A stretch of 64,000 nt of DNA from Macrostomum lignano (taxonomy: Eukaryota). This document shows positions 26,110 through 51,088 of the stretch, in pieces. Below the pieces are notes generated by a model, which worked only from the letters and a program-made list of their open reading frames with translations, had not been told where the DNA came from and searched no databases. Both the position numbers and the translations under genes were made by a program. The stretch spans positions 124,001 to 188,000 of the forward strand of contig NIVC01001994.1 of NCBI GenBank assembly GCA_002269645.1, in the 5' to 3' direction. Every line of letters starts with the position of its first letter. Within the stretch, counting starts at the first letter, position 1.

Positions 26110-27765
26110 CTAACGAAGTGCATCCAAAATAGCTACTGCAGCCTTGCGGACGGCTTTCTTGCGAAGGCCCGACAGCACTTCGATTACCTCCAGAAACGCC
26201 TCTAGGGCAGGGAGGTGCTGGAGGTTGAACGCGATGAAGACAATTACAAATGCAATTATCGAGTCAGTAACACTGTCGAATGGGATGCTCGCACCGTTGA
26301 CGAAAACGCCGCACCATTTTCCATCCTCTGTCAGAATTCTGACTGGCAGTGCGTCGCGAAGAATAATAGACGGGTCGACTCGCAACCGACCGAGAAGAAG
26401 AAAGACAGCCACAGGCAGCTTGTCCTCCTCTGAAACAACTGGCAATTCCACATAATCCTTGCACAGCTTGAAATTTTTTAGCAACTGCCTTTTACTGTAC
26501 ACAAGCAACAAGGCGTTAATAATCCTGCTTCTCATTTCCGATGGACTTGGTGGAAGTACATAGTCAGTTTTGCTTCTGTTGTATGTCTGGATCATGAGAT
26601 ACGCCTCCTGCTGCAGTACTGCGATGTTTACCAGTGGCGCATATAAGGCAATTTCGTCACTAACCGTCAAATCTTGGCACCGCAATATTCGAATCGGAAA
26701 CAGAGCCTGCATTTCGTTGAGAACGTCTGATATTGAAGAGTCATGATGAGTCTCGTTCAATCTCGTTCGACGAGCTTCGTGTGACGGTGGTACATCGGTA
26801 TCGAACTCGCCGAAGTCAACGCTCTTCGCCATTGCACTGCCAGCATCGTCTGCATCACTATCATCATCGCCTTCTTCTTCGATCAGATCTTCGTCGTCGT
26901 TGATACGCTGCTTGTTGGCTCTTTTAGCACGTGAAGCTATAATTTCATTGTCATCATCTTCCTGGCCTTCAACTTCCTTGTACTGCCGTTTATGCCTTTG
27001 GCTCACAGTAACCGCACTTGGGCCTGCAGCAGCTGCAGCAGCATTTGGTAGAATTATACGCCGATGACCAAGTCGACCATGCTTCCGTCGCATCTCCTGA
27101 ACCGTTGGGCTGCTCTTGTCGACAAAGTCGCCAACGAACCGGAGCTCTTTGAAACGCCGAATAAGCTTTTGGCGCCAAAAGCTTGAGCTCCCACTTAATG
27201 AGGTGTCCTTCAGTCCAGGATACGAAGTTACTATGGAAGTGCACACATCTGTTATCTGGCTAGATGACAGGTATGGTTCATTTGGCGACAGATAGTTCAA
27301 ACAGATGTGATCGACGATGAATTTAAGGAACTTGTTGACAAACGTCGCGTTCATTTTTAAATCGGAACCCTTTTCGGGGTGCATTCGTAGATCACGAAGG
27401 GCGTTGGCGAGATCGTCCATTCGTGGAAGCGAGTACACTTCGGGCCATGGAAGTGTAGTTGCAGCCGTAGCTGCTACAGCTGGATTTGGACTCAGAGCCT
27501 GTGTGCCTCGACTCGGTGTTGTGGCAATCTCGACATTGCGTATTTCGCTTTGCTGCTTTGGTGTAGTTGAAGGTTCTACAGGGCATGCACCGCAGCTTGG
27601 AAGCAACTCTCCAGAAAGAAGGAAGTACACAGTTCTACATTCCTTTGCCACCTCCGATATTAAATCATCGTCGTCGATTTCGAAACCGTCAGAAGTGACA
27701 ATGCGAACATTTTCAACATCTGCAATGTCCAATTTTAAACAACCTTTGATGCGAAGGTCCGCCAA
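26110..27765 (-). CDS. Transposon accessory ORF2 (>551 aa) with CIDE-N/PB1-like N-terminus and acidic linker
   Basis: Open frame extends upstream to ~27825 (LRICNGSEERKKLLPASGLTLADL) behind an AG acceptor with no in-frame ATG. RIVTSDGFEIDDDD resembles CIDE-N LVLEEDGTEVDDE. Lies inside the CACTG element, co-oriented with the transposase. Confidence 0.7.
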   Translation of the reverse strand: MADLRIKGCLKLDIADVENVRIVTSDGFEIDDDDLISEVAKECRTVYFLLSGELLPSCGACPVEPSTTPKQQSEIRNVEIATTPSRGTQALSPNPAVAATAATTLPWPEVYSLPRMDDLANALRDLRMHPEKGSDLKMNATFVNKFLKFIVDHICLNYLSPNEPYLSSSQITDVCTSIVTSYPGLKDTSLSGSSSFWRQKLIRRFKELRFVGDFVDKSSPTVQEMRRKHGRLGHRRIILPNAAAAAAGPSAVTVSQRHKRQYKEVEGQEDDDNEIIASRAKRANKQRINDDEDLIEEEGDDDSDADDAGSAMAKSVDFGEFDTDVPPSHEARRTRLNETHHDSSISDVLNEMQALFPIRILRCQDLTVSDEIALYAPLVNIAVLQQEAYLMIQTYNRSKTDYVLPPSPSEMRSRIINALLLVYSKRQLLKNFKLCKDYVELPVVSEEDKLPVAVFLLLGRLRVDPSIILRDALPVRILTEDGKWCGVFVNGASIPFDSVTDSIIAFVIVFIAFNLQHLPALEAFLEVIEVLSGLRKKAVRKAAVAILDALR

Positions 27766-27957
27766 GGTCAGGCCAGAAGCTGGAAGGAGCTTCTTGCGCT
27801 CCTCTGAGCCGTTGCAGATTCGAAGCTGAAATGAGGTATGATGTGCACAACCTCAATCAGAATACATCTGGTAAGACACAGATAAAATGAATTTATAAAG
27901 CCAAGGAATTCTTGTTCATTATGATTTTTCGGCTTTTGTCCTTGGCTTGACTTAATG

Positions 27958-28500
27958 TAGTAGTAGTAGTAGTAGTAGTAGTTAATTGGCTTGGGCAAGT
28001 AGTGCCCGTTATGTTAATAGAGTGTATTTAATTAGATATGAATAACTTAGTGTTAACAAAAGTTGTCAATAATGGACAATACAATTTAAACAGTAGAAGT
28101 TTTTGCATTAGATCAATGCCTTTAAGTTGCTGTGAGATGGCTTTCTTCCAAGGATCAATTGGATTGTCATTGTTGTTAAAGAGACTAGTGGTAGTAGAGT
28201 TAGCTTTAAATAAGTTTTAACCAGAAAAGGAGGTACCTTTTCTTAATGATTTCAGAAATAGGAAGAATGTTGAGTTCATTGAGTATGACTTTATTGCTTG
28301 TATGTATGCTCTGGTAGATTAAGAATTTAAGGAGAGACTTATAGAATTTCAATTGAATATTATCCAGATCCTTAATTTTTGATTGCCTGGCCAGTGGACC
28401 CCATACCTTGCAGCCATAAGTAATGACTGTGACAACAAAATGTTTAGTGTTTTTATGATGTTTTTGTTTTTTTGTTGCTTTTTTCTGAACAATCTTCACT
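27958..28500 (-). mobile_element. 5'-truncated non-LTR retrotransposon 3' fragment with (ACT)n tail, inside the CACTG element
   Basis: VITYGCKVWG...LDNIQLKFYKSLL...SNKVILNELNILPI...RYLLFWLKL resembles the post-RT C-terminus of LINE ORF2; ends in an (ACT)n tail at ~27958-27985. Confidence 0.6.
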
Positions 28501-28804
28501 CTTCAATACTAAAAGCTGAAGCTTCAACAAGCTTAGACAGAGGATGAACCCATTTTAGGCAAGAAATGGTTCGAAAACCTGCACCATCTACATAGAACTA
28601 GCCTAGTCAAGGAAGGGCAAGCCGACCTATCATAAAAAGGTTAGACACCTATAGGCCAGAAATCTATGTAAGGTGGAGAGCACAGTTCCTTGTGCTAGAG
28701 GCAAGGTGGCCCTTGTAATAATTTGTTATTTTATGAAGTGCAAGTGTATGCCATATTGTTATATGCTTAAATTTATCTAAAATGATACCCACTAAGATTG
28801 TAGA

Positions 28805-31360
28805 TTATTGATCAATGTTTTGGCAATGTAGCATTGGATAATATTTTAAAGAAAGAAAAAGTTTCCCTTGATACATTAAAAATGGAATTGGCTGATGAAA
28901 AAAGTGCTGAGTAGGTTCAATAAATACTAAATGGTCATTATTCACAGTGCATATAAAACTGCTATAATGACAAGAAAATTTAGCATTCACTTTTTTACAA
29001 ATAATTATCCACTTGTTGGAAAGTTGAATAATATGGCTAATTAATGCTAAAGCAATTCCAGTTGGTTCTAAAATTGGCAAACAATAACGGTAATTTAATG
29101 TTGGAGTCCGATATACAAACCCCTGATATTTTAGTTCATTAGTAGAAAGACAAATAGTGCCAATAATTGAGTCTGTATCTAAATTCATGTTGTTGCATAA
29201 CTCAGTTTGTTCATCTATTGTCAATAGCATATTTAAGCTAATAGGATTTATATTATGGCTCTTAATTGTACCTGGTTCATAGTGCTTAATGATAAGTGCC
29301 TTTTGAATTTGATATTGTTTTGCACATGTATAGGCAGGATTTTTGAAATTTCTTGCATGCCTGTTTATATTCTTAAGCAATTGATGATGAGCTTCACCTC
29401 GCATACACCATAAGTATTTAAGACCACTATAATAATGATAAAATTCAGGATAGTGACATATATAATGCAATTTACATTTATATTTAGGATTGAAGCCCGT
29501 GTTTCTATATATTAATTCTAATTGGCCAGAAATAAGAGATTGAAAATATTCTAAGTTTATGCTACTATCATATGGGGACAAAATTATGTCAAGAAACTGC
29601 CTGTGACAATTAAATAATATCCAAATATCATCATCCAACTCAAACAAATGTCCAAATAAAAGTCCAAAGTATTGTAGAATAACAATTATTTGATTAGAAG
29701 TACATGGTAGATGATAATTTTGTAAGTGATATTTATTTATTGTAGGAATACTGACTTCTTTAATCAAATTTAGTTGTTTGTTTATATAGTCTATACTAAT
29801 ATTATGATTTTGAATAATACTTAATAGAATAATACATATAACAACATGAGAAAACCCTTCAAACACATCATGCATTATATCAGGGGGGAAAAAATATTGA
29901 AAGTTAATATATGCTACACTTCTAAACACAGATGGTGAAATTAAACCATTACTTAAGGATTTAAAATCTTCAATATATGATGAATTATCTCGATATTCAA
30001 ATAGGAATAATGTACTTAATTCTTCTAATCTAATGCTACAAAGCTGTTTATAACCTATAAAACAAAATCTACAAATATAACCACTTGAAAACCAAGTTTG
30101 CATACCTAACATTCTATGTATTGATAAATTATCCCCAGTCATGAAAGCAGCAATAACAGGCATTTTTATCAAATTACTTATTTGAAATTCTTCAAAGTAA
30201 AGCTCATTCAGCTCTCTAATTAATGGAAATAAACAAAACTGTAAACCTTTCTTTTTAACATTTGAATCATTAAATACTGTTAAAAGAAAATATAAGTCTG
30301 AAGATGAACTAAGATATTCAGGGAAATTAAGAATAGTAAAGTATACTACACATAATTTATGTTTTGTTTTGGCAGACCCAATAGGATTACATATTTCAAT
30401 TTCATCTGAATAAAGTTTTATGAATATACCATTCTTATTTGTTAACAATGGACTAATATGTTCTTCAAAATAAGTAGACTTGAAAAAAAAATTTTCTTTG
30501 TTGGTTGCATTTAAATAAGAATTTGTAATAATATACTTAAGCAATGTCTCATTTTTTATAATAGAACTAAGTGTTTCTTTTATTGGAATATATAGAATTT
30601 TTAATTTTGATTCTTCATCTATGATTTCAATGGGCTCAACAAAATTAAACTTGTTTTGTAAAATTTCAAATATTTTTTTATTACTTAATAGATGCTCTAA
30701 TGAAAGGTCAATCATTTCTTGCAAATTTAATTTATTTTTATAAGAATTATAGCTGTTAACTATTGAAGGACATTCTTCTTTTAAAAATTGCTCAAATAAC
30801 AAAAAATAGTCATCAGCAAACTTCAATACTATTTCCTTAACAAGTTCACATAATTGATTAGATTTGCTTTTAGGAATTAAAAAGAAATGTCTAGACTTTA
30901 GATAAAAGTAAACAAAATTTTCAGCAAGATGTTTTCTTGTATTTTCACATAAAAAATCACTAGACATTTCAAATTCAGGGTCTTTTTTTTCATTTTCAAC
31001 TTGGTTACAAATAGTAGATAATATGGCTATATCTATAGGCACAGCTTGCAATTCATTTTCTAAAGGGTTTCCTAATAAGTCTAGAGTAGGGTTATTATGA
31101 ACACAATTTGGCTGTAGAACTTGGTCTTGGGAAAAATTATCAACAACACTGTTTTTGTGCATACGATAGGCATGTGCTTGTAATCCTTCAATTGTAACAC
31201 TAATATGGTAACATCCCCTAACTGGACATAAAAAATTGCTATTCCCAAAAGAATGGTATAGTTTTATATGACTTATAAGCTTAAATAAATCCTTGTGTGT
31301 ATGAAGACATATACTACATTGAAATAGTTTTGAAATTACATTTTCATCTCCATTTAACAT
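28805..31360 (-). CDS. EnSpm-type transposase, 851 aa, N-terminal C2H2 zinc fingers
   Basis: Uninterrupted ORF with CSIC...H...H and CPVRGC...HAYRMH fingers; LYSDEIEICNPIG, GDNL, CRFC, PDIMHD-EG and KLHYICHY...WCMRGEAHH motifs typical of animal EnSpm transposases. Confidence 0.88.
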   Translation of the reverse strand: MLNGDENVISKLFQCSICLHTHKDLFKLISHIKLYHSFGNSNFLCPVRGCYHISVTIEGLQAHAYRMHKNSVVDNFSQDQVLQPNCVHNNPTLDLLGNPLENELQAVPIDIAILSTICNQVENEKKDPEFEMSSDFLCENTRKHLAENFVYFYLKSRHFFLIPKSKSNQLCELVKEIVLKFADDYFLLFEQFLKEECPSIVNSYNSYKNKLNLQEMIDLSLEHLLSNKKIFEILQNKFNFVEPIEIIDEESKLKILYIPIKETLSSIIKNETLLKYIITNSYLNATNKENFFFKSTYFEEHISPLLTNKNGIFIKLYSDEIEICNPIGSAKTKHKLCVVYFTILNFPEYLSSSSDLYFLLTVFNDSNVKKKGLQFCLFPLIRELNELYFEEFQISNLIKMPVIAAFMTGDNLSIHRMLGMQTWFSSGYICRFCFIGYKQLCSIRLEELSTLFLFEYRDNSSYIEDFKSLSNGLISPSVFRSVAYINFQYFFPPDIMHDVFEGFSHVVICIILLSIIQNHNISIDYINKQLNLIKEVSIPTINKYHLQNYHLPCTSNQIIVILQYFGLLFGHLFELDDDIWILFNCHRQFLDIILSPYDSSINLEYFQSLISGQLELIYRNTGFNPKYKCKLHYICHYPEFYHYYSGLKYLWCMRGEAHHQLLKNINRHARNFKNPAYTCAKQYQIQKALIIKHYEPGTIKSHNINPISLNMLLTIDEQTELCNNMNLDTDSIIGTICLSTNELKYQGFVYRTPTLNYRYCLPILEPTGIALALISHIIQLSNKWIIICKKVNAKFSCHYSSFICTVNNDHLVFIEPTQHFFHQPIPFLMYQGKLFLSLKYYPMLHCQNIDQ

Positions 31361-32555
31361 ATCCTGGACAGTGGATAAGCCTACTAAATTCGTCGTTGTG
31401 GAATGGACAACGCGTAAAAACGTTTAAAAAGCACTAATTTTTAGGTTTGATCAGAACGAATTGCACGCAACAATCTAAATGTTCGAAGTTAGTAGAGTGA
31501 AACAAAAGTTCCCAACATATTTTTGATCTGTGTTAGAAATGCGCTTGTACCTGTTAAAAGGAATACAATATATAATTCCTTTAATTTAAGGCATTTAGAG
31601 CTTTCGATTGATGCAATTACATTTGACGGATAATTTTATTTGTGTTTTTATGCGGCAAAAAATACGGTGGTATAAAACCTAAATTTATTTCCAGTCCGAT
31701 TTTCTCTATAAAATCTCGCGTGTGCTTAAAAAAATATCATTTGAGGGCACTTGAAAAAATTTCATTCGTTTTCTCTGACCAAAAAAATCGGACCTTCAGA
31801 CATGAAGGTCCGCCTTCAGGCATGAAGGTCCGCATTATGCAATTCGGACCTTATCCGGACCCATAAGATTTACAGTGATCAATGCCACCTATTATGCGTT
31901 GCTTCTGCGAAAGCTCCGCACCGAACTGGCCAAAAAGCAACCTGGCAAGCTGCACCTTGGGATTCTCTTTCACCACGACAATGCACCAGCCACCAGCCCA
32001 CACGTCTCGGCTCTGCCATGAAGCCCTGCAAGATTTCCGCTGGGAAATCCTCCAGCATCCTCCATATAGCCCTGCTTCCCAAGCTGAAGGAAGCAATCAA
32101 AAGGAGACCAAAATGAGGACAAAGAGGCTGCCAAAAAGGCTACTGTACAGTGGCTTGTTGCACAGCCTCCTTAGTTCTATGTGAACGGCCTGGAGAGATG
32201 GCAACACTGCATGGAGAAGCGTCTGACCCTGGAGGGGGACTATGTAGAAAAGTGATTTCCTTTTGAAGTTTGACACTCGTGACAAAAAAATTATCATTAC
32301 TTTTTGACTTTTTGACATTATCAGTAGTCTCAACTGATCCAAAATTGTCCCATCTCATACCATATAGTCCAAACTAATCCCAAATAGTCCCAAGATATCC
32401 CAAAATCACCCTAAATCCCAAACTAAATCCAAATCCTCCTAACTACTCTCCAATAATAAAAATCCAGAGCATTCTCTTCCTACCGCACTCAGAATCCCAG
32501 ATCAGCTTCAAAAATCCCCAGAAATCCCGAACCGAATACCACAACTCCCAGCCAC

Positions 32556-33088
32556 ATGAACGGCTCCGCCGTCGGTCCTGACGGTGACGGAGGCGACCAG
32601 CACGACGAGCTGCCGGCGCTGTCCTCGGCCTTCCGCCAGCGCATCCGGCCGGTGCTGAACCGCATCGACGAGCTGCGCTCCCACGGCCTGCAGAGCGACC
32701 TCAAGCTGCCCATGGTGGCGGTGGTGGGCGACCAGTCGGTGGGCAAGTCCTCGGTGCTGGAGGCCATCTCGGGCGTGGAATTTCCCCGCGGCACCGGCAT
32801 GGTCACCCGCTGCGCCCTGCAGCTGTCCATGCAGTGGAACGCCGACCCAGAGGCGCCGTGGCACGGTCGCATCAGCTACAAGGACGTCAACGGGCACAAG
32901 GTGGACAAGGAGCTCAACTCGCCTGGGGAAGTGGACGGAGCCGTGAGGGAGGCCCAGCAGCGGATGACGCACGGAGACAACGAGATCTCGAGTGAGCAGA
33001 TTGACCTGGCGATCAAGGGACCGGATGTGCCCGACCTGACCTTGATTGACCTGCCGGGCATCGCCAGGTGAGACGGACAGACAGGCAT

Positions 33089-33125
<37 letters not shown>

Positions 33126-35808
33126 TCAGAACAAATCAGCACAAAGGCACAGATGAACGCAATAACCCCCGACCCTCAGGTACTCTGCCACAGGCGGTTC
33201 TGGCATCGCTCAGATCACCAAGTCGCTCATCGCCAAGTACGTCAGCCAGCCGCAGGTGCTCATCCTGGTGGTGGTGCCTTGCCACCAGGACATCGAGACG
33301 GTCGAGGCGCTGTCACTGGCCAAGGAGGCCGACCCGCAGGGCGAGCGCACCATCGGGGTGCTCACGTGCCCGGACATGGTGAACAAGGGCGCGGAGCAGG
33401 AGACGCTGAAGATCGCCAACAACGAGAAGATCCCGCTGAAGAAGGGCTACGTGATGGTGAAGTGCCGCAGTCCCGAGGAGCTCAACAACGGCGTCACCCT
33501 GACTGAGTCGGTGGCCAACGAGGCGGCTTTCTTCAAGACTCACCGGCACTTCAGCCAGCTGCCTGAGCAGTCCGTGGGCATCCGGACTCTGGCGGACAAG
33601 CTGACGGAGGAGCTGTTTGAGTCCGTGAAGAGGAACATCAGCACGCTGCAGAATGACATCCTGGTGAGAGAGTGAACAGGGATTCTGCAGAATTCTGGAT
33701 GTACTGATCCCCAGACTCTCGTGTGCTGAGGTCCTGATCCCCAGACTCTCGTGTGCTGAGGTCCTGATCCCCAGACTCTCGTGTGCTGAGGTCCTGATCC
33801 CCAGACTCTCGTGTGCTGAGGTCCTGATCTCCATACTTCTGTGTGCTGAGGTCCTGATCCCAAGACTCTCGTGTGCTGAGGTCCAGATCCCCAGACTCTC
33901 GTGTGCTGAGGTCCTGATCCCCAGACTCTCGTGTGCTGAGGTCCTGATCTCCATACTTCTGTGTGCTGAGGTCCTGATCCCAAGACTCTCGTGTGCTGAG
34001 GTCCAGATCCCCAGACTCTCGTGTGCTGAGGTCCTGATCCCCAGACTCTCGTGCGCTGTGCTAGGGTTTCGGCACACTTGGGTATTGTAATCCCAGAGTC
34101 GTAAAGCCTAGAAAATCCCTACGCCAGTGACTGTCAATTGTCTGTTCAGTGGTCCCGACACAGCTCACCTGCCCAATCAAGCCGTCTTATTCCCCAAAGC
34201 TCCACACGAGAGCCTCCCTGCCACCCCGCAGGAGATGCGCAAGAAGTTCCAGGAGGAGCTGCAGCGTCTCGGACAGCCGGTCGCCGAGACCAAAGACGAG
34301 AAACGGCGCTACCTGTTCGAGATGCTGAGCAACTTCAACAAAGACGTTGCCATAGCAACACAGGGCGAGATGAACGCCAGGTTTCACCTGTACGCCAAGT
34401 GCAGAAAGCACTGGACAGAGTTGGGGAAGCAGATTCATAGAGCTTGGCCAGGTAAGAAATTAGATGATAGACTCGGGTGTCTGGTTGGAGTAACAAAAAG
34501 TGTGTTCATATTTTCAACACTGTTATATTCACGTACTCAGGCTGGGTCACTCGCAGCCACATCTCGCACTATTGGCAGCCGCCCGAGCAGGTGACCCGTC
34601 TAATCACTGACTTGAGAGGTCGCGAGCTCGCCTCCTATGATCACGTGTTCCCAATAATTGAACGAATCTACAAGGAGGAGTTTCTGAACAAACTGAAACA
34701 GCCTGCGGAACAATTTCTGGAGCAGGTTGGATGATTTTGGTTTTATCGGGAAGCTGGGGAGTGGGGTGGCGGTCGTATGGGGTCGGCCGGTCCGTGAGAG
34801 TGGCGGGGAGGGTGGTAGGCGGTCCATGGGAATTAAGGGGCTTTGAACCAACGTGAAAGTATGGGGTTGGCGGGATTCTTTTGGCAATCGCAGCTCTATT
34901 GAGATGAAGTTTCCACAAAACCAAATCAATCAAGGTATCCGACGAGGTCACAGATGTGGTGCACCTCATTGCCCATAAGGTATTCGGCGACTTCCAAGAC
35001 ATCTTCGAGGTGGTGACGGAGACCAGCAACGAGGAGATCGCCAAGGTGCTGGAGCTGGCCAGAGCGGATCTGAGCGGACGGCTGTTTCTTCAGGAGGCGC
35101 GAGTGTTCTCGCAGGACAGCCAGTTCCAGGAGCGCATTGCAAAGATTGAGGAGGATCTTTACAAGGACAACGGCAACCAGCAGTGAGTGGCACTGATTAC
35201 GTAACTGAGAATAGGTGTAGTGTTATTGATTAGGACAAGGCCGTGCAGCCCTAGATAAATACAGTTGCATGTACAAGAATAGAGGGCAGATTGGCTGCAA
35301 ATTAGCGATAAAAACAAAACAAAAAGTCAGAAGAGTGAGAGAGGGAGAGAGACTTCTAGCCAGCCAATCAGCGCTGGCGGTGGGGCAGAGGGACAGACTG
35401 CCTGACAGCCAATCAGCACTGGTGGTGGGGAAGAGGAACAGATAATAAGGGCCAATCAGCAACCAATCAGAAAATGCCAACCCAATCCCCGCCCGCAGGC
35501 CGCCCATCCCCGACAGCGCTGAGCGAATCCGCCGCGGTCTCGACGCCTACCTGCGGGTGGCCACCGAGCGACTGAGCGACACCATCCCGCAGTCCGTTCT
35601 CTACTTCATGTTCGATGTTGTTTCTAAGCAGCTCGGCAACCGCGCCCTCGACCTGCTGTCCGAGTCCGAGTCTGCCGAGACGTTTCTGTCGCTGCTGCGT
35701 GAGCCGCGGCACAAAACTGCGAGAAGGAAACAGCTGAAGGAGATGATGGAGCAGCTGCGGCTGGCGCAGCGGGACTTCAACAAGTTTCGGCTGGATGTGC
35801 AGGCTTGA
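32556..35808 (+). CDS. Mx: Mx-like dynamin-family large GTPase, copy A (652 aa from Met 32556)
   Basis: Exons 32556-33067, 33180-33663, 34232-34451, 34541-34725, 34935-35182, 35499-35808 with consistent phases. G1 GDQSVGKSS, FPRGTGMVTRC, G3 DLPG, G4 TCPD, stalk RGREL, GED (AYLRVATERLSDTIPQSVLYFM...RRKQLKE); no PH or proline-rich domain, so Mx-like. Confidence 0.9.
33700..34060. repeat. 30-bp minisatellite in intron of Mx copy A
   Basis: GTGTGCTGAGGTCCTGATCCCCAGACTCTC units. Confidence 0.95.
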
Positions 35809-37234
35809 GGTGTAATTGAGTCATAAGCGGCTCAATTTTCCGTTGTAACGTCACTTGAAAACTTCTGAATAAACTCTATAAGAACTGGAATGCACTTTGG
35901 CTACCCGGCTACCCGTCTGTCTCTTTGCCCCATTGTCGGTGCTTTTTCCGAAAGTGTGCAACAGTTTCTTTGTGTTTTTAGGCTTTTTTTCAGCTTATTT
36001 CCTATTTCTAAGCTATTGTGCCAACCAATTGTTCAGTGTTATCGAACTTTTAAGCGCCCGTGTGTCTCTTTAAAATACACTAGCTATTCCGGTTTAATTT
36101 TTCAAATAGTTCTGACAATGCGTTTTACTGACGTGATGGGCGGGGGGGGGGTTGTCACCGACTAGAGTGACTGACTGACCATTAAACTTACACTCGGTCC
36201 TAAACTTAAGCTCTCTTCCTTTTTCGGCGATCAGAACTCTCTCGGAGTCACGCTTGGTTTGACGGTCTGGCGGTCAACTAGACATGAACTAACCCTGTGC
36301 AGAAGCTAAATTTAGCAACAGGCGGTCGGTCGTAAAGTCGGAGAGAGATAAGAAAATTAAGGTACGATAAACCGAGCTAGGCGAAAGCCAGACTTTATAT
36401 TTAAAGTAATCAACTGGACGGACCTCTTCATGCGTCACGCGCACGGACAGGCCTAAAATATTGATCGTGCAAATACTATACGCTCTAAATAGATCGTACC
36501 CACAACAGGAAAAGTAAAACGGCCCAATTGGGGGCAACTAAACGCAAAATTACATATATAAGAGGAAATAGGAATTGATACGATTTTTTGTCAGTTTATG
36601 CATAAATCAGACGCAGGGTGCTTAACAAAACGGCTCATGGTATTGAATTTCCGCTTCTAGATACTCTGCAAGTCTTACGGTCAACGCGAAACAAGTAAAA
36701 TAGTATATATGTGTTAATGTGTACCTTCATCAGCACAACCGCAGAAGTTGAAAATAGCCTTCACGGGACGTCGGTCTAAGTCCATGCAGTACTTCATCAA
36801 GGTGCTTGGGTAGTCACACAAAAAGAGCTGCCCTGCTTAACGTATAAAGAAGTGTACTAAACTGCAACAAGGCGCAATCACTTGTTGACCTCGTCTACCG
36901 ATCAAAGACAGTCAAAGGCAGCCATTCATGCGCAGGCTGATCGGATCTGGCATCAGGTATCCCCGCCGCTGGACTGTCTCCTGAAAAGGCGGAGTTTCTT
37001 CCGCAGAAGGGCTCCAATACAGGCCCTCATTCAACGAAGATCCGAGCGTGTACGTCACGTTGGCGCATCAGGCCGGATCAGATTCGACCGTTGATCAATC
37101 ACGAAGCGGACCAATCGAGCACTGAGGCAGAGAACAACGCGCCGCCGCTCCGTTACCAAGACATGCCGCGGTGACACTGCTGCTAGCCTGATCAACGGCT
37201 CTGCCCGAATCCGAATTCCCCTGGTAGCAATCAA

Positions 37235-38240
37235 TCCACAAACTACGCGTAGCATCACCAATCAATCCACAAACTACGCGTAGCATCACCAATCAATCCA
37301 CAAACTACGCGTAGCATCACCAATCAATCCACAAACTACGCGTAGCATCACCAATCAATCCACAAACTACGCGTAGCATCACCAATCAATCCACAAACTA
37401 CGCGTAGCATCACCAATCAATCCACAAACTACGCGTAGCATCACCAATCAATCCACAAACTACGCGTAGCATCACCAATCAATCCACAAACTAGCATCAC
37501 CAATCAATCCACAAACTAGCATCACCAATCAATCCACAAACTAGCATTACCAATCAATCCACAAACTAGCATTACCAATCAATCCACAAACTAGCATCAC
37601 CAATCAATCCACAAACTAGCATCACCAATCAATCCACAAACTAGCATCACCAATCAATCCACAAGCATCACCAATCAATCCACAAGCATCACCAATCAAT
37701 CCACAAACTACGCGTAGCATCACCAATCAATCCACAAACTAGCATCACCAATCAATCCACAAACTAGCATCACCAATCAATCCACAAACTAGCATTACCA
37801 ATCAATCCACAAACTAGCATTACCAATCAATCCACAAACTAGCATCACCAATCAATCCACAAACTAGCATCACCAATCAATCCACAAGCATCACCAATCA
37901 ATCCACAAACTAGCATCACCAATCAATCCACAAACTAGCATCACCAATCAATCCACAAACTAGCATCACCAATCAATCCACAAACTAGCATCACCAATCA
38001 ATCCACAAACTAGCATCACCAATCAATCCACAAACTAGCATCACCAATCAATCCACAAACTAGCATCACCAATCAATCCACAAACTAGCATCACCAATCA
38101 ATCCACAAGCATCACCAATCAATCCACAAGCATCACCAATCAATCCACAAACTAGCATCACCAATCAATCCACAAGCATCACCAATCAATCCACAAACTA
38201 GCATCACCAATCAATCCACAAGCATCACCAATCAACCTAC
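37235..38240. repeat. CCAATCA-containing minisatellite (31/25/21-bp unit variants) in the spacer between the Mx genes
   Basis: CACCAATCAATCCACAAACT(ACGCGT)AGCAT units. Confidence 0.95.
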
Positions 38241-38553
38241 AAGCCTTGCCCCACAGGTCACAGAATCCTTTATACTAAAAATGGTTTGTTGGTAAAAAGT
38301 AGCGTTTTCGTGTCAGCTGTTCCCGTGTGTATTTATGCAGCAAAACTCGTACATAGAATTTTTAAGTAAATACTTGAATTTTTTAATTTAATAAAAGGTG
38401 CAACAAACTATTTTATTCATTTTATCGATATTTCTTACACTGGCTGTCGGAGGAGGACATTAGCAGAGGGAATAACAGAGAGGACACGCCAGCCAATCAG
38501 CGCTGATGATGGGGCAGAGACAGACGGCCAGCCAGCCAATCAGCGCTGATGAT

Positions 38554-38915
38554 TTTTTTTATTAGAGGCAGGGGGTTGTGTGCACCCTGGCGTACTTTAA
38601 GCGACATAGGCACACAACCGGCGAGAGGCATTACTGCCCATTCCGCCGACTCCCCTGAGCAGGCATACAAGCGCGCGGATACGTGCGCAGGCACACACTC
38701 ACACAGGAGTGTACAGCGGCCCTAACTTTATTTTATCGTTAGGCATGTACACTTCACTGCGCCTTGGGGGGTTGGCTCTCAAGGCCGTTAATTGCACGAG
38801 CAGAGCCAAGTTGAGATTCCAATTCAGCCACAAATTAATGTGACTGCACTTGGAATCGAGCCTGGGTCACTGGCACACCAGAGCAGCTGCGCTACCGCTG
38901 GGCTACGGCTCCCCT
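38554..38915 (-). mobile_element. tRNA-derived SINE, ~360 bp, with A-tail and 12-bp TSD
   Basis: Minus-strand head GGGGAGCCGTAGCCCAGCGGTAGCG (A box) ... GGCTCGATTCC (B-box-like); T run at 38554 is the A tail; AGCGCTGATGAT flanks both sides (38542-38553, 38916-38927). Confidence 0.8.
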
Positions 38916-39270
38916 AGCGCTGATGATGGGGCAGAGAGACAGACGGCCAGCCAGCCAATCAGAGCTGATGATGGGGCAGAGAGACAGACGGCCAGCCAGC
39001 CAATCAGCGCTGATGATGGGGCAGAGAGACAGACGGCCAGCCAGCCAATCAGCGCTGATGATGGTGCAGAGAGACAGACGGCCAGCGAGCTAATCAGCGC
39101 TGATGATGGGGCAGAGAGACAGACGGCCAGCCAGCCAATCAGCGCTGATGATTGGGCAGAGAGACAGACGGCCAGCCAGCCAATCAGCGCTGATGATGGG
39201 GCAGAGAGACAGACGGCCAGCCAGGCAATCAGCGATAATGATGGGACAGAGAGACAGACGGCCAGCCAAC
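38916..39270. repeat. 45-bp minisatellite (CAGCCAATCAGCGCTGATGATGGGGCAGAG...) downstream of Mx copy B
   Basis: About 8 units; related units at 38485-38553, 35355-35470 and inverted at 39745-40010. Confidence 0.9.
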
Positions 39271-39378
39271 CATAGTGCTTTTTAAGTTCTGATACCATTA
39301 ATCCATCAATTTTAAATTGAAGAAAACACAAAACCGACAAAGAAAAATTAGTAGGATTTTATTAATAATAAGTAACGT

Positions 39379-42300
39379 TTACAGCCTGAACTTGTTGAAG
39401 TCCCGCTGCGCCAGCCGCAGCTGCTCCATCATCTCCTTCAGCTGTTTCCTTCTCGCAGTTTTGTGCCGCGGCTCACGCAGCAGCGACAGAAACGTCTCGG
39501 CAGACTCGGACTCGGACAGCAGGTCGAGGGCGCGGTTGCCGAGCTGCTTAGAAACAACATCGAACATGAAGTAGAGAACGGACTGCGGGATGGTGTCGCT
39601 AAGTCGCTCAGTGGCCACCTGCAGGTAGGCTTCGAGACCGCGGCGAATTCGCTCAGCGCTATCGGGGACAGGCGGCCTGCGGGCGGGGATTGGGTCGGCA
39701 TTTTGAGATTGGTTGCTTATTGGCTTTTATCGTCGGTCCCTCTCCCCCACCATCAGCGCTGATTGGCTGGCTGGAAGTCTGTCCCTCCGCCCCACCATCA
39801 GCGCTGATTGGCTGGCTGGAAGTCTGTCCCTCCGCCCCACCATCAGCGCTGATTGGCTGGCTGGAAGTCTGTCCCTCCGCCCCACCATCAGCGCTGATTG
39901 GCTGGCTGGAAGTCTGTCCCTCCGCCCCACCATCAGCGCTGATTGGCTGGCTGGAAGTCTGTCCCTCCGCCCCACCATCAGCGCTGATTGGCTGGCTGGA
40001 AGTCTCTCTCTTGCTTTCTCGCACTCTTCTGACTTTCTGTCTCGTTATCGTTGTTATCGCTGATTGGCAGACAATCTGCCCTCTCTTCTCGTATATTGTA
40101 ACTGTAATTGTAACTCTAAACAATGCAGGCTGCACGGCCTTGTCCTAATCAATAACCCTACACCTATTCTCAGTTACGTAATCAGTGCCACTCACTGCTG
40201 GTTGCCGTTGTCCTTGTAAAGATCCTCCTCAATCTTTGCAATGCGCTCCTGGAACTGGCTGTCCTGCGAGAACACTCGCGCCTCCTGAAGAAACAGCCGT
40301 CCGCTCAGATCCGCTCTGGCCAGCTCCAGCACCTTGGCGATCTCCTCGTTGCTGGTCTCCGTCACCACCTCGAAGATGTCTTGGAAGTCGCCGAATACCT
40401 TCTGGGCAATGAGGTGCACCACATCTGTGACCTCGTCGGATACCTTGATTGATTTGGTTTTGTGGAAACTTCATCTCAATAGAGCTGCGATTGCCAAAAG
40501 AATCCCGCCAACCCCATACTTTCACGTTGGTTCAAAGCCCCTTAATTCCCATGGACCGCCTACCACCCTCCCCGCCACTCTCACGGACCGGCCGATCCCA
40601 TACGACCGCCACCCCACTCCTCAGCTTCCCGATAAAACCAAAATCATCCAACCTGCTCCAGAAATTGTTCCGCAGGCTGTTTCAGTTTGTTTAGAAACTC
40701 CTCCTTGTAGATTCGTTCAATTATTGGGAACACGTGATCATAGGAGGCGAGCTCGCGACCTCTCAAGTCAGTGATTAGACGGGTCACCTGCTCGGGCGGC
40801 TGCCAATAGTGCGAGATGTGGCCGCGAGTGACCCAGCCTGAGTACGTGAATATAACAGTGTTGAAAATATGAACACACTTTTTGTTACTCCAACCAGACA
40901 CCCGAGTCTATCATCTAATTTCTTACCTGGCCAAGCTCTATGAATCTGCTTCCCCAACTCTGTCCAGTGCTTTCTGCACTTGGCGTACAGGTGAAACCTG
41001 GCGTTCATCTCGCCCTGTGTTGCTATGGCAACGTCTTTGTTGAAGTTGCTCAGCATCTCGAACAGGTAGCGCCGTTTCTCGTCTTTGGTCTCGGCGACCG
41101 GCTGGCCGAGACGCTGCAGCTCCTCCTGGAACTTCTTGCGCATCTCCTGCGGGGTGGCAGGGAGGCTCTCGTGTGGAGCTTTGGGGAATAAGACGGCTTG
41201 ATTGGGCAGGTGAGCTGTGTCGGGACCACTGAACAGACAATTGACAGTCACTGGCGTAGGGATTTTCTAGGCTTTACGACTCTGGGATTACAACACCCAG
41301 GTGTGCAGAAACCCTAGCTCAGCACACGAGAGTCTGGGGATCAGGACCTCAGCACACGAGAGTCTGGGGATCAGGACCTCAGCACACGAGAGTCTTGGGA
41401 TCAGGACCTCAGCACACACAAGTCTGGGGATCAGGACCTCAGCACACGAGAGTCTGGAGATCAGGACCTCAGCACACGAGGGTCTGAGGATCAGGACCTC
41501 AGCACATGAGAGTCAGGGGATCAGGACCTCAGCACACGAGAGTCTGGGGATCAGGACCTAAACACACGAGAGTCTGGAGATCAGGACCTCAGCACACGAG
41601 AGTCTGGAGATCAGGACCTCAGCACACGAGAGTCTGGGGATCAGGACCTCAGCACACGAGAGTCTTGGGATCAGGACCTCAGCACACGAGAGTCTTGGGA
41701 TCAGGACCTCAGCACACACAAGTCTGGGGATCAGGACCTCAGCACATGAGAGTCAGCGGATCAGGACCTCAGCACATGAGAGTCTGGGGATCAGGACCTC
41801 AGCACACACAAGTCTGGGGATCAGTACATCCAGAATTCTGCAGAATCCCTATTCACTCCCTCACCAGGATGTCATTCTGCAGCGTGCTGATGTTCCTCTT
41901 CACGGACTCAAACAGCTCCTCCGTCAGCTTGTCCGCCAGAGTCCGGATGCCCACGGACTGCTCAGGCAGCTGGCTGAAGTGCCGGTGAGTCTTGAAGAAA
42001 GCCGCCTCGTTGGCCACCGACTCAGCCAGGGTGACGCCGTTGTTGAGCTCCTCGGGACTGCGGCACTTCACCATCACGTAGCCCTTCTTCAGCGGGATCT
42101 TCTCGTTGTTGGCGATCTTCAGCGTCTCCTGCTCCGCGCCCTTGTTCACCATGTCCGGGCACGTGAGCACCCCGATGGTGCGCTCGCCCTGCGGGTCGGC
42201 CTCCTTAGCCAGTGACAGCGCCTCGACCGTCTCGATGTCCTGGTGGCACGGCACCACCACCAGGATGAGCACCTGCGGCTGGCTGACGTACTTGGCGATG

Positions 42301-42953
42301 AGCGACTTGGTGATCTGAGCGATGCCAGAACCGCCTGTGGCAGAGTACCTGAGGGTGCAGAGGGTCTCTGCGTCATCCGTCTGTCTGTCTGTCTGTCTGT
42401 CTGTCTGTGTGTCTGTCTGTATGCCTGTCTGTCCGTCTCACCTGGCGATGCCCGGCAGGTCAATCAAGGTCAGGTCGGGCACATCCGGTCCCTTGATCGC
42501 CAGGTCAATCTGCTCACTCGAGATCTCGTTGTCTCCGTGCGTCATCCGCTGCTGGGCCTCCCTCACGGCTCCGTCCACTTCCCCAGGCGAGTTGAGCTCC
42601 TTGTCCACCTTGTGCCCGTTGACGTCCTTGTAGCTGATGCGACCGTGCCACGGCGCCTCTGGGTCGGCGTTCCACTGCATGGACAGCTGCAGGGCGCAGC
42701 GGGTGACCATGCCGGTGCCGCGGGGAAATTCCACGCCCGAGATGGCCTCCAGCACCGAGGACTTGCCCACCGACTGGTCGCCCACCACCGCCACCATGGG
42801 CAGCTTGAGGTCGCTCTGCAGGCCGTGGGAGCGCAGCTCGTCGATGCGGTTCAGCACCGGCCGGATGCGCTGGCGGAAGGCCGAGGACAGCGCCGGCAGC
42901 TCGTCGTGCTGGTCGCCTGCATCACCGTCAGGACCGACGGCGGAGCCGTTCAT
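39379..42953 (-). CDS. Mx: Mx-like dynamin-family large GTPase, copy B (648 aa from Met 42953)
   Basis: Exons 42953-42442, 42348-41865, 41146-40927, 40837-40653, 40443-40196, 39676-39379; the first five have the same lengths as in copy A; few amino-acid differences; ends FNKFRL*. Confidence 0.9.
39745..40010. repeat. 45-bp minisatellite in last intron of Mx copy B
   Basis: CATCAGCGCTGATTGGCTGGCTGGAAGTCTGTCCCTCCGCCCCAC units. Confidence 0.9.
41320..41820. repeat. 30-bp minisatellite in intron of Mx copy B
   Basis: Reverse complement of the 33700-34060 array; intron is 150 bp (5 units) longer. Confidence 0.95.
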
Positions 42954-43331: not shown

Positions 43332-43589
43332 GAGTCCTGGAGCTCCTGGATGCCCGACGGCGACGGCAGCTGGCTGTTGAGCTGCTCCTGAAGTGCCTCC
43401 TGAACATCAGGCTGGGCACCGCCGCTCGGACTGAGCAGCTCGCTGGGCGGTCTCGATTTCTTCTTTCGCTGGCGTCTGATAAAGCAAGTGCAGTATAATT
43501 TTACAGTAAATGACTGTGCAATACCCCACAAGTCTGAGTCCCAATGTAGATCATGTTAATGCAAATTACCTTGAAGTTTCCAGACTCAT
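43332..43589 (-). CDS. Candidate upstream exons of Mx copy B: 43589-43570 (MSLETS-R) and 43475-43332 (144 nt, RQRKKKSRPPSELLSP...QELQDS)
   Basis: GT-AG bounded, phase 2 throughout; in frame with the GTPase exon if the acceptor AG at 43010-43009 is used. Confidence 0.5.
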
Positions 43590-43691: not shown

Positions 43692-43746
43692 CTTTTATAG
43701 TAGGCCAAGGGAGGGGGCTCCGCAATTTCCAAGAAATTCCACGTCA
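43692..43746 (-). promoter_or_regulatory. Candidate promoter of Mx copy B: CRE-like, GAS-like and TATA motifs
   Basis: Minus strand TGACGTGG (43746-43739), GGAATTTCTTGGAA containing TTCTTGGAA (43735-43727), TATAAAA (~43699-43693), ~110 bp before ATG 43589. Confidence 0.45.
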
Positions 43747-51039: not shown

Positions 51040-51088
51040 GGCAGACACTAAGACAGACGGACAGACAGACAGACGGACAGACAGACAG

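What the first reader, a model, noticed from the sequence alone, without database searches (positions are those of the whole stretch)
32556..42953. Tail-to-tail inverted pair of near-identical Mx-like GTPase genes
Seen: two complete six-exon dynamin-family genes (GTPase, stalk, GED, no PH/PRD) converge across a 3.57-kb spacer, forming a ~10-kb imperfect palindrome. Both frames are intact. They differ at a few residues (G/A near the N-terminus, T/A, S/G, H/Q, I/V, D/E, R/Q) and at the C-terminus (FRLDVQA vs FRL). Established: Mx proteins are antiviral effectors that oligomerise through the stalk. Inference: a duplicated invertebrate antiviral locus whose products could co-assemble, with different N-terminal exons giving different specificity.
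Basis: partly seen in the sequence, partly recalled or inferred. Interest (0 to 1): 0.8.

Follow-up and report, generated by a model that had tools for sequence, protein, structure and literature searches.

The report
Inverted Mx gene pair, flatworm
Two nearly identical, intact Mx-type (antiviral-family) GTPase genes of the flatworm Macrostomum lignano lie tail to tail and are kept alike by copying between the two arms; the genes and their Mx identity are already on record, so this is a tidy but fairly ordinary immune-gene duplication.

Summary
There are two intact, six-exon, GT-AG spliced dynamin-family genes on opposite strands, separated by a 3,570-bp spacer. They differ by the seven listed substitutions and by the FRLDVQA/FRL ends.

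The window is 100% identical to Macrostomum lignano contig NIVC01001994.1 (assembly Mlig_3_7). Both genes are already annotated as hypothetical proteins: PAA61827.1 (copy A) and PAA61830.1 (copy B).

They are Mx-clade proteins. MxA and MxB are the best sequence and fold matches. A 98%-identical paralogue, PAA92268.1, sits in the Mx clade of a published phylogeny that credits M. lignano with at least six Mx proteins.

New here:
- A second, collinear locus on another contig carries the same tail-to-tail A/B pair. This argues against a fold-back artefact.
- From intron 0 to intron 5, about 105 informative sites group the two arms of each locus together. Exon 6 and the 3' ends group A with A and B with B. 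The duplication is therefore older than the locus split, and arm-to-arm gene conversion has a sharp boundary in intron 5.
- Each copy has a private promoter and private leader exons outside the given coordinates. B's leader carries a basic RRQRKKKSR patch.
- All four copies are under purifying selection.

Antiviral function, co-assembly and specificity remain untested.

The parts
23397..23410 (+). Distal copy of the shared promoter motif AATTTCCAAGAAAT, upstream of copy A
   Evidence: Exact 14-mer. It occurs 3 times in the window against 0.05 expected. It is conserved at the same place in L002.
23628..23650 (+). Proximal palindromic motif TTCTTGGAATTTCCAAGAAATTC of copy A, about 45 nt upstream of the TATA-like box (23693-23699)
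   Evidence: It is the only significant similarity between the A and B promoters.
23807..23829 (+). Copy A leader exon (coding part ATGAGCGAGGCTGATAATGCAAG, MSEADNA-), donor GT at 23830. It splices to the acceptor cag|CCACATG at 32550.
   Evidence: The same leader is present in PAA61827.1, PAA92268.1 and two UniProt models from another assembly (P0124, P0125).
24441..32315 (.). About 7.9-kb insertion with imperfect 33-nt terminal inverted repeats, inside the 20-nt minisatellite of copy A's intron 0. It is absent from the second locus. It carries ORFs 26110-27765(-) and 28805-31360(-).
32556..35808 (+). Copy A, shared exons 1-6 (32556-33067, 33180-33663, 34232-34451, 34541-34725, 34935-35182, 35499-35808); 652 aa from MNGS; = PAA61827.1
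32316..35250 (+). Arm-to-arm gene-conversion tract on the A side (intron 0 minisatellite to the start of intron 5). The partner on the B side is 40128 to about 43190.
   Evidence: About 105 informative sites group A1 with B1 and A2 with B2, against 1 orthologous site.
35251..35808 (+). Unconverted segment of copy A: the 45-nt minisatellite part of intron 5 plus exon 6. It holds the A-specific I553, D565, R569 and the DVQA tail.
   Evidence: Here sites group A1 with A2 and B1 with B2.
35868..35873 (+). AATAAA polyadenylation signal of copy A
35809..39378 (.). 3,570-bp non-palindromic spacer holding the two private 3' UTRs, a 25/31-nt tandem array (37228-38242) and a 45-nt array (38916-39272)
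   Evidence: It is collinear with the spacer of L002. It has no Rfam or tRNA hit.
39358..39363 (-). AATAAA polyadenylation signal of copy B
39379..42953 (-). Copy B, shared exons 1-6 (42953-42442, 42348-41865, 41146-40927, 40837-40653, 40443-40196, 39676-39379); 648 aa from MNGS; part of PAA61830.1
43332..43475 (-). Copy B second leader exon, 144 nt, entering and leaving in phase 2. It encodes -RQRKKKSRPPSELLSPSGGAQPDVQEALQEQLNSQLPSPSGIQELQDS-. Skipping it would keep the reading frame.
   Evidence: The ORF and splice sites are conserved in L002.
43570..43589 (-). Copy B first leader exon (coding part ATGAGTCTGGAAACTTCAAG, MSLETS-)
43692..43741 (-). Copy B core promoter: motif TGGAATTTCTTGGAAAT (43741-43725), an adjacent TGACGT, and TATAAAAG (43699-43692)

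Best explanation
This is a genuine, old, tail-to-tail (convergent) duplicate pair of Mx-clade dynamin-like GTPase genes in the flatworm Macrostomum lignano.

Shown here:
- Both copies are intact. Each has its own promoter, leader exon(s), stop codon and poly(A) signal.
- The same A/B pair exists at a second collinear locus.
- From intron 0 to the start of intron 5 the two arms of each locus are far more alike than the orthologous copies in the other locus. From the intron 5 minisatellite through exon 6 the relationship flips to A-with-A and B-with-B.
- So the duplication predates the split of the two loci, and recurrent gene conversion between the inverted arms has homogenised about 3 kb (exons 1-5). 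The tract ends at a length-variable 45-nt minisatellite.
- The inner edge of the palindrome lies right after codon 648. Copy B lost the last four codons and took a new stop and 3' UTR. A related species' transcript ends FRLDIG, so A is probably the parental form.
- All copies evolve under purifying selection.

Inferred:
- The proteins act like Mx proteins. That means GTP-dependent G-domain dimerisation and stalk-mediated oligomerisation (the RGRE loop-L2 motif is conserved) in innate, probably antiviral, defence.
- With virtually identical stalks, A and B should be able to co-assemble.
- The functional difference most likely lies in the private N-termini. A has a 9-residue leader. B has a 56-residue leader with the basic patch RRQRKKKSR, a candidate nuclear-targeting or substrate-binding signal. 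This resembles the long and short forms of human MxB.
- It may also lie in the three A/B-specific residues at the L4 loop and the start of stalk helix 4.
For: Identity and anatomy.

Organism and annotation:
- The window is 100% identical to NIVC01001994.1.
- PAA61827.1 is copy A and PAA61830.1 is copy B.
- The annotation is a genome-guided transcriptome assembly (PMC5730564), so the leader exons rest on RNA-seq.

Mx membership:
- PDB phmmer gives MxB 347 bits and MxA 341 bits over the full length, against dynamin at 168, Drp1 at 142 and Vps1 at 140.
- All best database hits outside Macrostomum are named Mx.
- The AlphaFold model has pLDDT 81.4 and shows a G domain, BSE and stalk.
- The top five Foldseek hits are MxB and MxA.
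- The 98%-identical PAA92268.1 lies in the Mx clade with high support in PMC11789081.

Second locus:
- L002 on NIVC01000059.1 has the A-type gene on + and the B-type gene on -.
- Flanks and spacer are collinear.

Gene conversion:
- Informative sites give 108 concerted, 88 orthologous and 7 crossed, sharply partitioned at 35211/35267.
- Introns 3-4 are 99-100% identical within a locus against 89-94% between loci.
- In exons 1-5, dS between arms is 0.013 and 0.024, against 0.08-0.10 between loci. In exon 6, A-B dS is 0.10-0.15 against 0.054 for A1-A2.

Constraint: omega is 0.03-0.24 in all comparisons.

Exon model: an intronless transcript-derived homologue (P0002, two SRA runs) aligns without gaps across all five junctions.

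Leaders: the ORFs, splice sites and TATA boxes are conserved between loci.
Against: - No expression, localisation, GTPase or antiviral data were available here. Function is by homology only.
- The G4 motif reads TCPD instead of the usual TKPD. The L4 loop is predicted to be only about 10 residues against about 40 in human MxA. Biochemistry and target recognition may therefore differ from vertebrate Mx.
- The B leader is used in only one of the two annotated B-type models. PAA92269.1 has a different, probably erroneous, N-terminus.
- The two loci come from the same assembly, and 36% of its length is reported to lie in scaffolds that are chimeric between subgenomes (PMC10733133). No independent long-read confirmation was made.
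- The loci are more diverged (4-10%) than the roughly 2% reported between subgenomes, so their exact relationship (homeologues or an older segmental duplicate) is open.
- Exon 6 offers only about 75 synonymous sites, so the relative dating is rough.
Confidence: 0.8

Rival explanations
1. Assembly artefact: a single Mx gene was turned into a false palindrome, either by a fold-back (chimeric) long read or by joining two subgenome copies in inverted orientation.
For: - M. lignano is a neopolyploid, its assembly is highly redundant, and 36% of its length is in scaffolds chimeric between subgenomes.
- The arms are 96-99% identical.
- Both loci come from the same assembly.
Against: - The arms differ structurally. 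The 30-nt repeat has 11.8 against 16.9 copies. The 45-nt repeat in intron 5 has about 2 against 6 copies.
- The 3' ends, stops, poly(A) signals, promoters and leader exons are different and non-homologous.
- The same A/B pair, with the same A-specific and B-specific characters, spacer and flanks, recurs on a second contig.
- A mis-join of subgenome copies would give two genes of the same type, not A and B types with private ends.
Confidence: 0.03
2. There was no gene conversion. Instead each locus duplicated its Mx gene independently and recently, which would explain why the arms are more alike within a locus than between loci.
For: High within-locus arm identity is also what a recent duplication would give.
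Against: - Exon 6, the truncated B C-terminus, the 3' UTRs, the spacer and the private promoters and leaders are orthologous between loci. A1 groups with A2 and B1 with B2.
- Two independent duplications would have to share orientation, both breakpoints and the same A/B-specific substitutions.
Confidence: 0.04
3. The pair is real but has a cellular, non-immune role such as membrane or organelle remodelling. Mx-clade membership would then not imply antiviral function in a flatworm without interferon.
For: - There is strong purifying selection and no sign of an arms race in the seven differences.
- The L4 loop, which determines specificity in vertebrate Mx, is short.
- The G4 motif is atypical.
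- The published analysis shows that the Mx lineage predates interferon.
- No functional data exist for invertebrate Mx beyond the two reports (abalone, oyster) that the paper cites.
Against: - Lineage-specific expansion to at least six Mx genes in M. lignano, and recurrent loss elsewhere, is the turnover pattern typical of immune genes (PMC11789081).
- There is no PH domain or other membrane-binding module.
- A shared palindromic TTCNNNGAA-type motif lies in the promoters of three Mx genes that are otherwise unalignable. This hints at co-regulation by an inducible factor, but it is weak evidence.
Confidence: 0.25
4. Only one copy is functional. The other is a redundant passenger whose reading frame stays intact merely because conversion from the good copy keeps repairing it.
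For: Conversion covers exons 1-5, which is 85% of the CDS, and could mask decay.
Against: - The unconverted exon 6 is intact, with omega 0.08-0.18 in all comparisons.
- B's private leader exons, splice sites, TATA box and promoter motif are conserved between loci at 94-98%.
- Both genes have transcript-based models.
Confidence: 0.08

Closest known systems
Vertebrate Mx1/MxA and Mx2/MxB paralogue pairs (interferon-induced dynamin-like GTPases)
   Same: - The domain plan is the same: N-terminal leader, G domain, BSE and stalk, with no PH domain or PRD.
- They are the best sequence and fold matches.
- The loop-L2 motif RGRE is conserved.
- The paralogues are linked and differ mainly in the N-terminal region. 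Human MxB has a long form with a basic N-terminal nuclear-targeting stretch and a short form without it (my recollection). This resembles leader B against leader A and the frame-preserving skippable exon of B.
   Different: - Identity is 35-37%.
- There are six shared coding exons rather than the many exons I recall for vertebrate Mx genes.
- The orientation is tail to tail.
- The L4 loop is about 10 residues rather than about 40.
- G4 reads TCPD, not TKPD.
- The organism has no interferon system, so induction would have to run through another pathway.
- No antiviral test exists.
The six published Macrostomum lignano Mx proteins (Langley et al. 2025, PMC11789081), in particular PAA92268.1
   Same: PAA92268.1 is the A-type gene of the second locus. 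It is 98% identical to copy A and has the same leader and C-terminus. In that paper it is placed in the Mx clade, with an Owenia fusiformis sequence (CAH1802128.1), an XP_006815062.1 sequence and vertebrate sequences among the neighbouring branches of the supplementary trees.
   Different: - The paper uses one representative. In the text and supplements I could search, it does not describe the inverted pair, the B type, the private leaders or the concerted evolution.
- The other paralogues examined here (L005, L006, L007) are single genes with no Mx neighbour within 10 kb.
Gene-bearing genomic palindromes homogenised by arm-to-arm gene conversion (for example the human Y-chromosome ampliconic palindromes; my recollection)
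   Same: - Inverted arms carry intact genes around a unique spacer.
- Arm-to-arm identity exceeds the divergence of orthologous copies.
- The conversion tract has sharp boundaries.
   Different: - The scale is tiny: arms of about 3.5 kb and a spacer of 3.6 kb, against tens of kb to Mb.
- The locus is autosomal, in a hermaphrodite.
- Arm identity is 96.7-99.6% rather than above 99.9%.
- Conversion covers only part of the gene, so the two products stay distinct at both ends.

Membership tests
Mx (myxovirus-resistance) clade of the dynamin superfamily | Dynamin-type G domain with G1-G4 motifs | tested here: met
   Pfam Dynamin_N scores 2.7e-38. G1 is GDQSVGKSS, the switch I Thr lies in GMVTRC, and G3 is DLPG. 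G4 is TCPD: Thr, Pro and Asp are invariant, but the usual Lys is Cys in all Macrostomum paralogues.
Mx (myxovirus-resistance) clade of the dynamin superfamily | Middle domain/stalk plus GED/BSE, and no PH domain or proline-rich domain | tested here: met
   Dynamin_M scores 2.1e-41 and GED 1.5e-14, with nothing else. The AlphaFold model has long stalk helices 305-345, 442-484, 488-523 and 556-604 and a C-terminal BSE helix 620-651.
Mx (myxovirus-resistance) clade of the dynamin superfamily | Closer to Mx than to dynamin, Drp1, Vps1, Opa1/Mgm1 (phylogenetic placement) | tested here: met
   I did not build a tree with outgroups. Full-length phmmer scores are 341-347 bits to MxA/MxB, against 168 for dynamin, 142 for Drp1, 140 for Vps1 and 108 or less for Mgm1/Opa1. 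The top five Foldseek hits are MxB and MxA. The best database hits outside Macrostomum are named Mx. The published tree places the 98%-identical PAA92268.1 in the Mx clade with support of at least 92.9/100.
Mx (myxovirus-resistance) clade of the dynamin superfamily | Stalk oligomerisation motifs (loop L2 YRGRE-type motif) | tested here: met
   LRGRELASY aligns to YRGKELLGF of MxB. R431, G432, E434 and L435 are invariant across 35 Mx-like sequences.
Mx (myxovirus-resistance) clade of the dynamin superfamily | Long disordered L4 loop at the stalk tip (the specificity determinant in human MxA) | tested here: inconclusive
   A loop is present at 546-555 with lower pLDDT. It is only about 10 residues, 12 shorter than MxB in the alignment. 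I553V lies in it, and D565E and R569Q lie just after it.
Mx (myxovirus-resistance) clade of the dynamin superfamily | Induction by infection or interferon, and antiviral activity | not testable with these tools
   No expression or infection data were accessible. No paper mentions the gene identifiers.
Gene-conversion-maintained genomic palindrome | Inverted arms around a unique spacer, with intact genes in the arms | tested here: met
   The spacer is 3,570 bp and has no arm homology.
Gene-conversion-maintained genomic palindrome | Arms more similar to each other than to their orthologues at another locus or species (concerted evolution), with an older unconverted segment showing the true age | tested here: met
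   About 105 concerted sites against 1 orthologous site in 32275-35211. Orthologous sites dominate from 35267 to 35808. The dS and identity tables agree.
Gene-conversion-maintained genomic palindrome | Physical confirmation of the inverted structure by spanning reads or clones | not testable with these tools
   Only assembled contigs were available. Support is indirect: the structure recurs on a second contig.

The most novel reading that the evidence does not exclude
The pair is a subfunctionalised two-component Mx module. Gene conversion keeps the GTPase and stalk core identical so that A and B can co-polymerise. The unconverted ends give B a basic, nuclear-targeting or substrate-binding leader (optionally skipped) and give A a short cytoplasmic one. 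Both are switched on together through the shared palindromic ATTTC-N3-GAAAT (STAT/GAS-like) promoter element. The same element also sits upstream of a 43%-identical Mx paralogue. This would point to an interferon-independent inducible antiviral programme in a flatworm.
Probability: 0.15. Interest if true: 0.6.

Novelty: new member of a known kind. Interest (0 to 1): 0.35.

Why it matters
Mx proteins are textbook interferon effectors, and only recently was it shown that they predate interferon and are expanded in a few invertebrates, M. lignano among them.

This locus gives a concrete picture of how such an expansion is organised. It is a small palindrome in which gene conversion keeps the enzymatic and oligomerising core identical, while the N-terminal leaders, the stalk-tip residues and the C-terminus stay copy-specific.

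M. lignano has working transgenesis and RNAi. Leader-GFP fusions, promoter reporters with the shared motif mutated, and knock-downs are therefore feasible. They could address what Mx proteins do in an animal without interferon.

The locus is also a practical warning for annotators. The two genes are easily collapsed or mis-modelled, as the discordant N-terminus of PAA92269.1 shows.

Tried and rejected
I relied on score gaps, the fold search and the published tree instead.
- A full-text search for the four gene identifiers (Mlig015345, Mlig033344, Mlig009769, Mlig009669) found no paper.
- The A and B promoters do not align beyond the 16-17-nt motif. The local alignment score in the same orientation is 22, against a shuffle maximum of 28. 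Promoter homology therefore cannot be claimed.
- I asked whether inverted pairing is general for M. lignano Mx genes. Three other paralogues are singletons.
- The promoter motif is absent from two of those loci (L006, L007). Related units, TTTCTAAGAAAT, form a tandem array at 58.7-59.1 kb. The motif is therefore not exclusive to Mx promoters, and I keep it as a side observation.
- Pfam gave nothing for the 851-aa ORF of the intron 0 insertion, and only a CIDE-N match below the curated cut-off (E 0.01) for the 551-aa ORF.
- Rfam and tRNA scans of the whole window were empty.
- Positive selection: with 7 non-synonymous and 12 synonymous differences between A and B, and omega well below 1, there is no signal and little power.


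Full report
**1. Observation**

An inverted-repeat search finds four collinear arm pairs between 32475-35793 and 39382-43034, at 93-99% complementarity. The sequence and explicit exon joining give two complete reading frames.

- Copy A is on the + strand: 32556-33067, 33180-33663, 34232-34451, 34541-34725, 34935-35182 and 35499-35808 (652 aa).
- Copy B is on the - strand: 42953-42442, 42348-41865, 41146-40927, 40837-40653, 40443-40196 and 39676-39379 (648 aa).
- Every intron is GT-AG in both copies.
- The proteins differ at G12A, T279A, S411G, H481Q, I553V, D565E and R569Q, and end in FRLDVQA against FRL.
- The spacer is 3,570 bp.
- Pfam finds Dynamin_N, Dynamin_M and GED, and no PH domain or PRD.

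**2. Source and existing annotation**

- A protein search returns a 99%-identical 'hypothetical protein BOX15_Mlig015345g1 [Macrostomum lignano]'.
- The locus fetched for it is 100% identical to window 29379-53589. The window is therefore part of contig NIVC01001994.1 of assembly Mlig_3_7.
- Copy B is PAA61830.1 (704 aa) and copy A is PAA61827.1 (661 aa).
- That annotation is a genome-guided transcriptome assembly built from RNA-seq (PMC5730564), so both models rest on transcripts.

**3. The genes are longer than the finding's coordinates**

Both models add private 5' exons that splice to the same acceptor, cag|CCACATG, six bases upstream of the shared ATG.

- A has one leader exon at 23807-23829 (MSEADNA-), preceded by TATAAAT at 23693.
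- B has two leader exons, preceded by TATAAAAG at 43699-43692.
  - The first is 43589-43570 (MSLETS-).
  - The second is a 144-nt exon at 43475-43332. It encodes RQRKKKSRPPSELLSPSGGAQPDVQEALQEQLNSQLPSPSGIQELQDS.
- The 144-nt exon enters and leaves in phase 2, so skipping it would keep the frame and give MSLETS-S-HMNG.
- The A leader also appears in two UniProt models from the older ML2 assembly (P0124, P0125).
- B's leader exons, splice sites and promoter are conserved at 94-98% in the second locus. The annotated model there (PAA92269.1) uses a different N-terminus, probably a read-through.
- A's intron 0 is 8.7 kb long because a roughly 7.9-kb element with 33-nt terminal inverted repeats (24441-32315) sits in its 20-nt minisatellite. 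The second locus lacks this element.

**4. Family**

- Against PDB sequences the protein aligns end to end with MxB (347 bits) and MxA (341 bits). Dynamin reaches 168, Drp1 142 and Vps1 140, and those matches cover the G domain only.
- An AlphaFold model built on 35 homologues has mean pLDDT 81.4. It shows a G domain, long stalk helices, a short loop at 546-555 and a C-terminal BSE helix.
- The five best Foldseek matches in the PDB are MxB and MxA at 30-32% identity, ahead of dynamin and Drp1 at 19-25%.
- The loop-L2 motif RGRE is invariant across the alignment.
- Langley et al. [quoted passage not shown] Their supplementary trees contain PAA92268.1 inside the Mx clade with high support.
- Two deviations are worth noting.
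  - The G4 motif is TCPD instead of TKPD in all Macrostomum paralogues.
  - The L4 loop is much shorter than in human Mx proteins.

**5. Not an assembly fold-back**

- The 90% cluster of the query holds four NCBI proteins on two contigs.
- On NIVC01000059.1 (locus L002) an A-type gene on + and a B-type gene on - again converge across a spacer.
- Flanks (95-96% identity), spacer segments and promoter regions are collinear with the window.
- Within the window the arms differ in repeat copy number: the 30-nt unit has 11.8 against 16.9 copies and the 45-nt unit about 2 against 6. They also have unrelated 3' UTRs, each with its own AATAAA.
- An artefact would not reproduce the same A-specific and B-specific characters on two contigs.
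- Direct read evidence was not available.

**6. Concerted evolution**

I aligned the four gene copies: A1 and B1 from the window, A2 and B2 from L002.

- Parsimony-informative sites fall into two blocks.
  - From 32275 to 35211, about 105 sites group A1 with B1 and A2 with B2, and one site is orthologous.
  - From 35267 to the stop codon the sites group A1 with A2 and B1 with B2.
- Introns 3 and 4 are 99-100% identical between arms but 89-94% identical between loci.
- In exons 1-5, dS between arms is 0.013 and 0.024, against 0.08-0.10 between loci. In exon 6, A-B dS is 0.10-0.15 against 0.054 (A1-A2) and 0.10 (B1-B2).
- The simplest reading is one old inverted duplication that predates the split of the two loci. 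It was followed by recurrent arm-to-arm gene conversion over about 3 kb.
- The tract stops at the length-variable 45-nt minisatellite in intron 5. That this heterology blocks the tract is my inference.
- Independent duplications in each locus would need identical orientation, breakpoints and exon 6 substitutions.
- The two loci are more diverged than the roughly 2% reported between M. lignano subgenomes (PMC10733133). Whether they are homeologues or an older segmental duplicate is open.

**7. Which copy is parental**

- Arm homology ends exactly after codon 648. A continues GAT GTG CAG GCT TGA, and B reads TAA followed by unrelated sequence.
- A 68%-identical protein is encoded by intronless 2.67-kb contigs in two sequencing runs, so it is probably a transcript of a related species. 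It ends FRLDIG and aligns without gaps across all five exon junctions.
- This supports the exon model. It also suggests that A keeps the ancestral C-terminus, while the duplication breakpoint cut four codons off B.

**8. Selection and the position of the differences**

- Omega is 0.03-0.24 in every comparison. All four genes are constrained, and there is no sign of diversifying selection, although power is low.
- G12A lies in the disordered N-terminus.
- T279A lies late in the G domain.
- S411G and H481Q lie in the stalk.
- I553V lies in L4, and D565E and R569Q lie in the first turns of stalk helix 4.
- Only the last three substitutions are stable A/B characters shared by both loci.

**9. Likely mechanism**

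- By homology the products should bind and hydrolyse GTP, dimerise through the G domain and oligomerise through the stalk.
- The stalks of A and B are almost identical, so mixed oligomers are plausible.
- The durable differences are at the ends.
  - A has a 9-residue leader. B has a 56-residue leader with the basic cluster RRQRKKKSR.
  - Three residues near the stalk tip differ.
  - A has four extra C-terminal residues.
- I consider it most likely that the two copies differ in localisation or partner binding through the leader. As I recall, the long and short forms of human MxB differ in this way.
- All of this is inference. None of it could be tested here.

**10. Comparison and novelty**

- Mx identity and the expansion in M. 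lignano are published, and both genes are annotated.
- In the material I could search, I found no description of the inverted pair, its A and B types, the private leaders or the conversion tract.
- Three other M. lignano Mx paralogues are single genes.
- This is a new example of two known things: linked Mx paralogues, and small gene-bearing palindromes kept alike by conversion.
- Interest is moderate to low.

**11. Side observation on regulation**

- The A and B promoters are not alignable. They do share an exact 16-nt island, AATTTCCAAGAAATTC.
- The 14-mer core occurs three times in the 64-kb window, always upstream of these two genes, against 0.05 expected.
- The same sites are kept in L002.
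- The 17-mer TGGAATTTCTTGGAAAT recurs, with a second 12-mer copy and two further TTCTAGGAA sites, 340-690 bp upstream of a 43%-identical Mx paralogue on another contig.
- The core is a palindrome, ATTTC-N3-GAAAT, which fits the TTCNNNGAA consensus of STAT-type sites (my recollection).
- Both promoters also show the same spacing: motif, then about 25-45 nt to the TATA box, then about 110 nt to the ATG.
- Two caveats apply.
  - Related units (TTTCTAAGAAAT) form a tandem array at 58.7-59.1 kb.
  - The motif is absent from two other Mx loci.

Noticed in passing
window 23397-23410, 23628-23650, 43725-43741; L002 9590-9603, 9824-9839, 24116-24131; L005 9315-9330, 9393-9410: An exact 14-17-nt palindromic motif (core ATTTCCAAGAAAT, that is ATTTC-N3-GAAAT, of TTCNNNGAA type) is the only similarity among the promoters of Mx copy A, Mx copy B and a 43%-identical Mx paralogue. 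It occurs 3 times in the window against 0.05 expected. It sits 25-45 nt upstream of the TATA-like boxes. It is a candidate shared regulatory element.
   Followed up: partly
window 58700-59120: A tandem array of about 20-22-nt units (GATATAGTTTCTAAGAAATGTT) holds a dozen or more copies of a TTTCTAAGAAAT/TTTCCAAGAAAT core related to the Mx promoter motif. It could be a satellite or a cluster of binding sites; this is undecided. No ORF or gene was recognised next to it.
   Followed up: no
window 24441-32315: An element of about 7.9 kb and 37% G+C, with imperfect 33-nt terminal inverted repeats (24449-24481 / 32278-32310), is inserted in the 20-nt minisatellite of copy A's intron 0. It is absent from the second locus. 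It carries two minus-strand ORFs. One is 551 aa (26110-27765), with only a CIDE-N match below the curated cut-off. The other is 851 aa (28805-31360; AT-rich, zinc-finger-like N-terminus, a PPDIMHDVFEG stretch), annotated as a gene, with no Pfam match. It is probably a DNA transposon of an undescribed or poorly covered family.
   Followed up: partly
window 43332-43475 (-): Copy B's second leader exon is 144 nt and symmetric in phase, so skipping it would keep the reading frame. The gene could then make a long form with the RRQRKKKSR patch and a short form without it. The B-type model at the second locus (PAA92269.1) ignores these exons and instead translates the upstream intron, which looks like an annotation error.
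   Followed up: partly
copy A residues 233-236 (window about 33367-33378) and all Macrostomum Mx paralogues: The G4 guanine-specificity motif reads TCPD instead of the TKPD found in the other Mx sequences aligned. The Lys-to-Cys change is shared by the paralogues P0002 and P0006, so it is lineage-wide. Its effect on nucleotide binding is unknown.
   Followed up: no
window 33704-34058 and 41318-41824; 35340-35440, 39732-40005 and 38916-39272; 23951-24440, 32316-32424 and 43035-43330: Three minisatellites are built into the gene pair. A 30-nt unit lies in intron 2 (11.8 against 16.9 copies). A 45-nt CCAAT-containing unit lies in intron 5 (about 2 against 6 copies), and again in inverted orientation in the spacer (8 copies). 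A 20-nt unit fills intron 0 of both copies. The 45-nt array coincides with the end of the gene-conversion tract.
   Followed up: partly
window about 1-10000 (-), about 63047-63454 (-), and the (GTCT)n/(AGAC)n tracts at about 1-650, 20500-21340, 51000-51800 and 53700-54380: The neighbouring genes are a WASH complex subunit 4 homologue (WASH-4_N and WASH-7_mid Pfam hits) on the minus strand at the left end, and a CNH-domain gene at the right end. Long (AGAC)n-type microsatellites recur throughout the window, including in intron 1 of both Mx copies.
   Followed up: no
L002 versus window (whole locus): The two Mx loci differ by 4-10% in aligned non-coding DNA and by dS 0.08-0.10. This is well above the roughly 2% SNP divergence reported between the S, L1 and L2 subgenomes of M. 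lignano. They may therefore be an older segmental duplicate rather than neopolyploid homeologues. UniProt models from the ML2 assembly (P0124, P0125) show further mosaic A-type variants.
   Followed up: no
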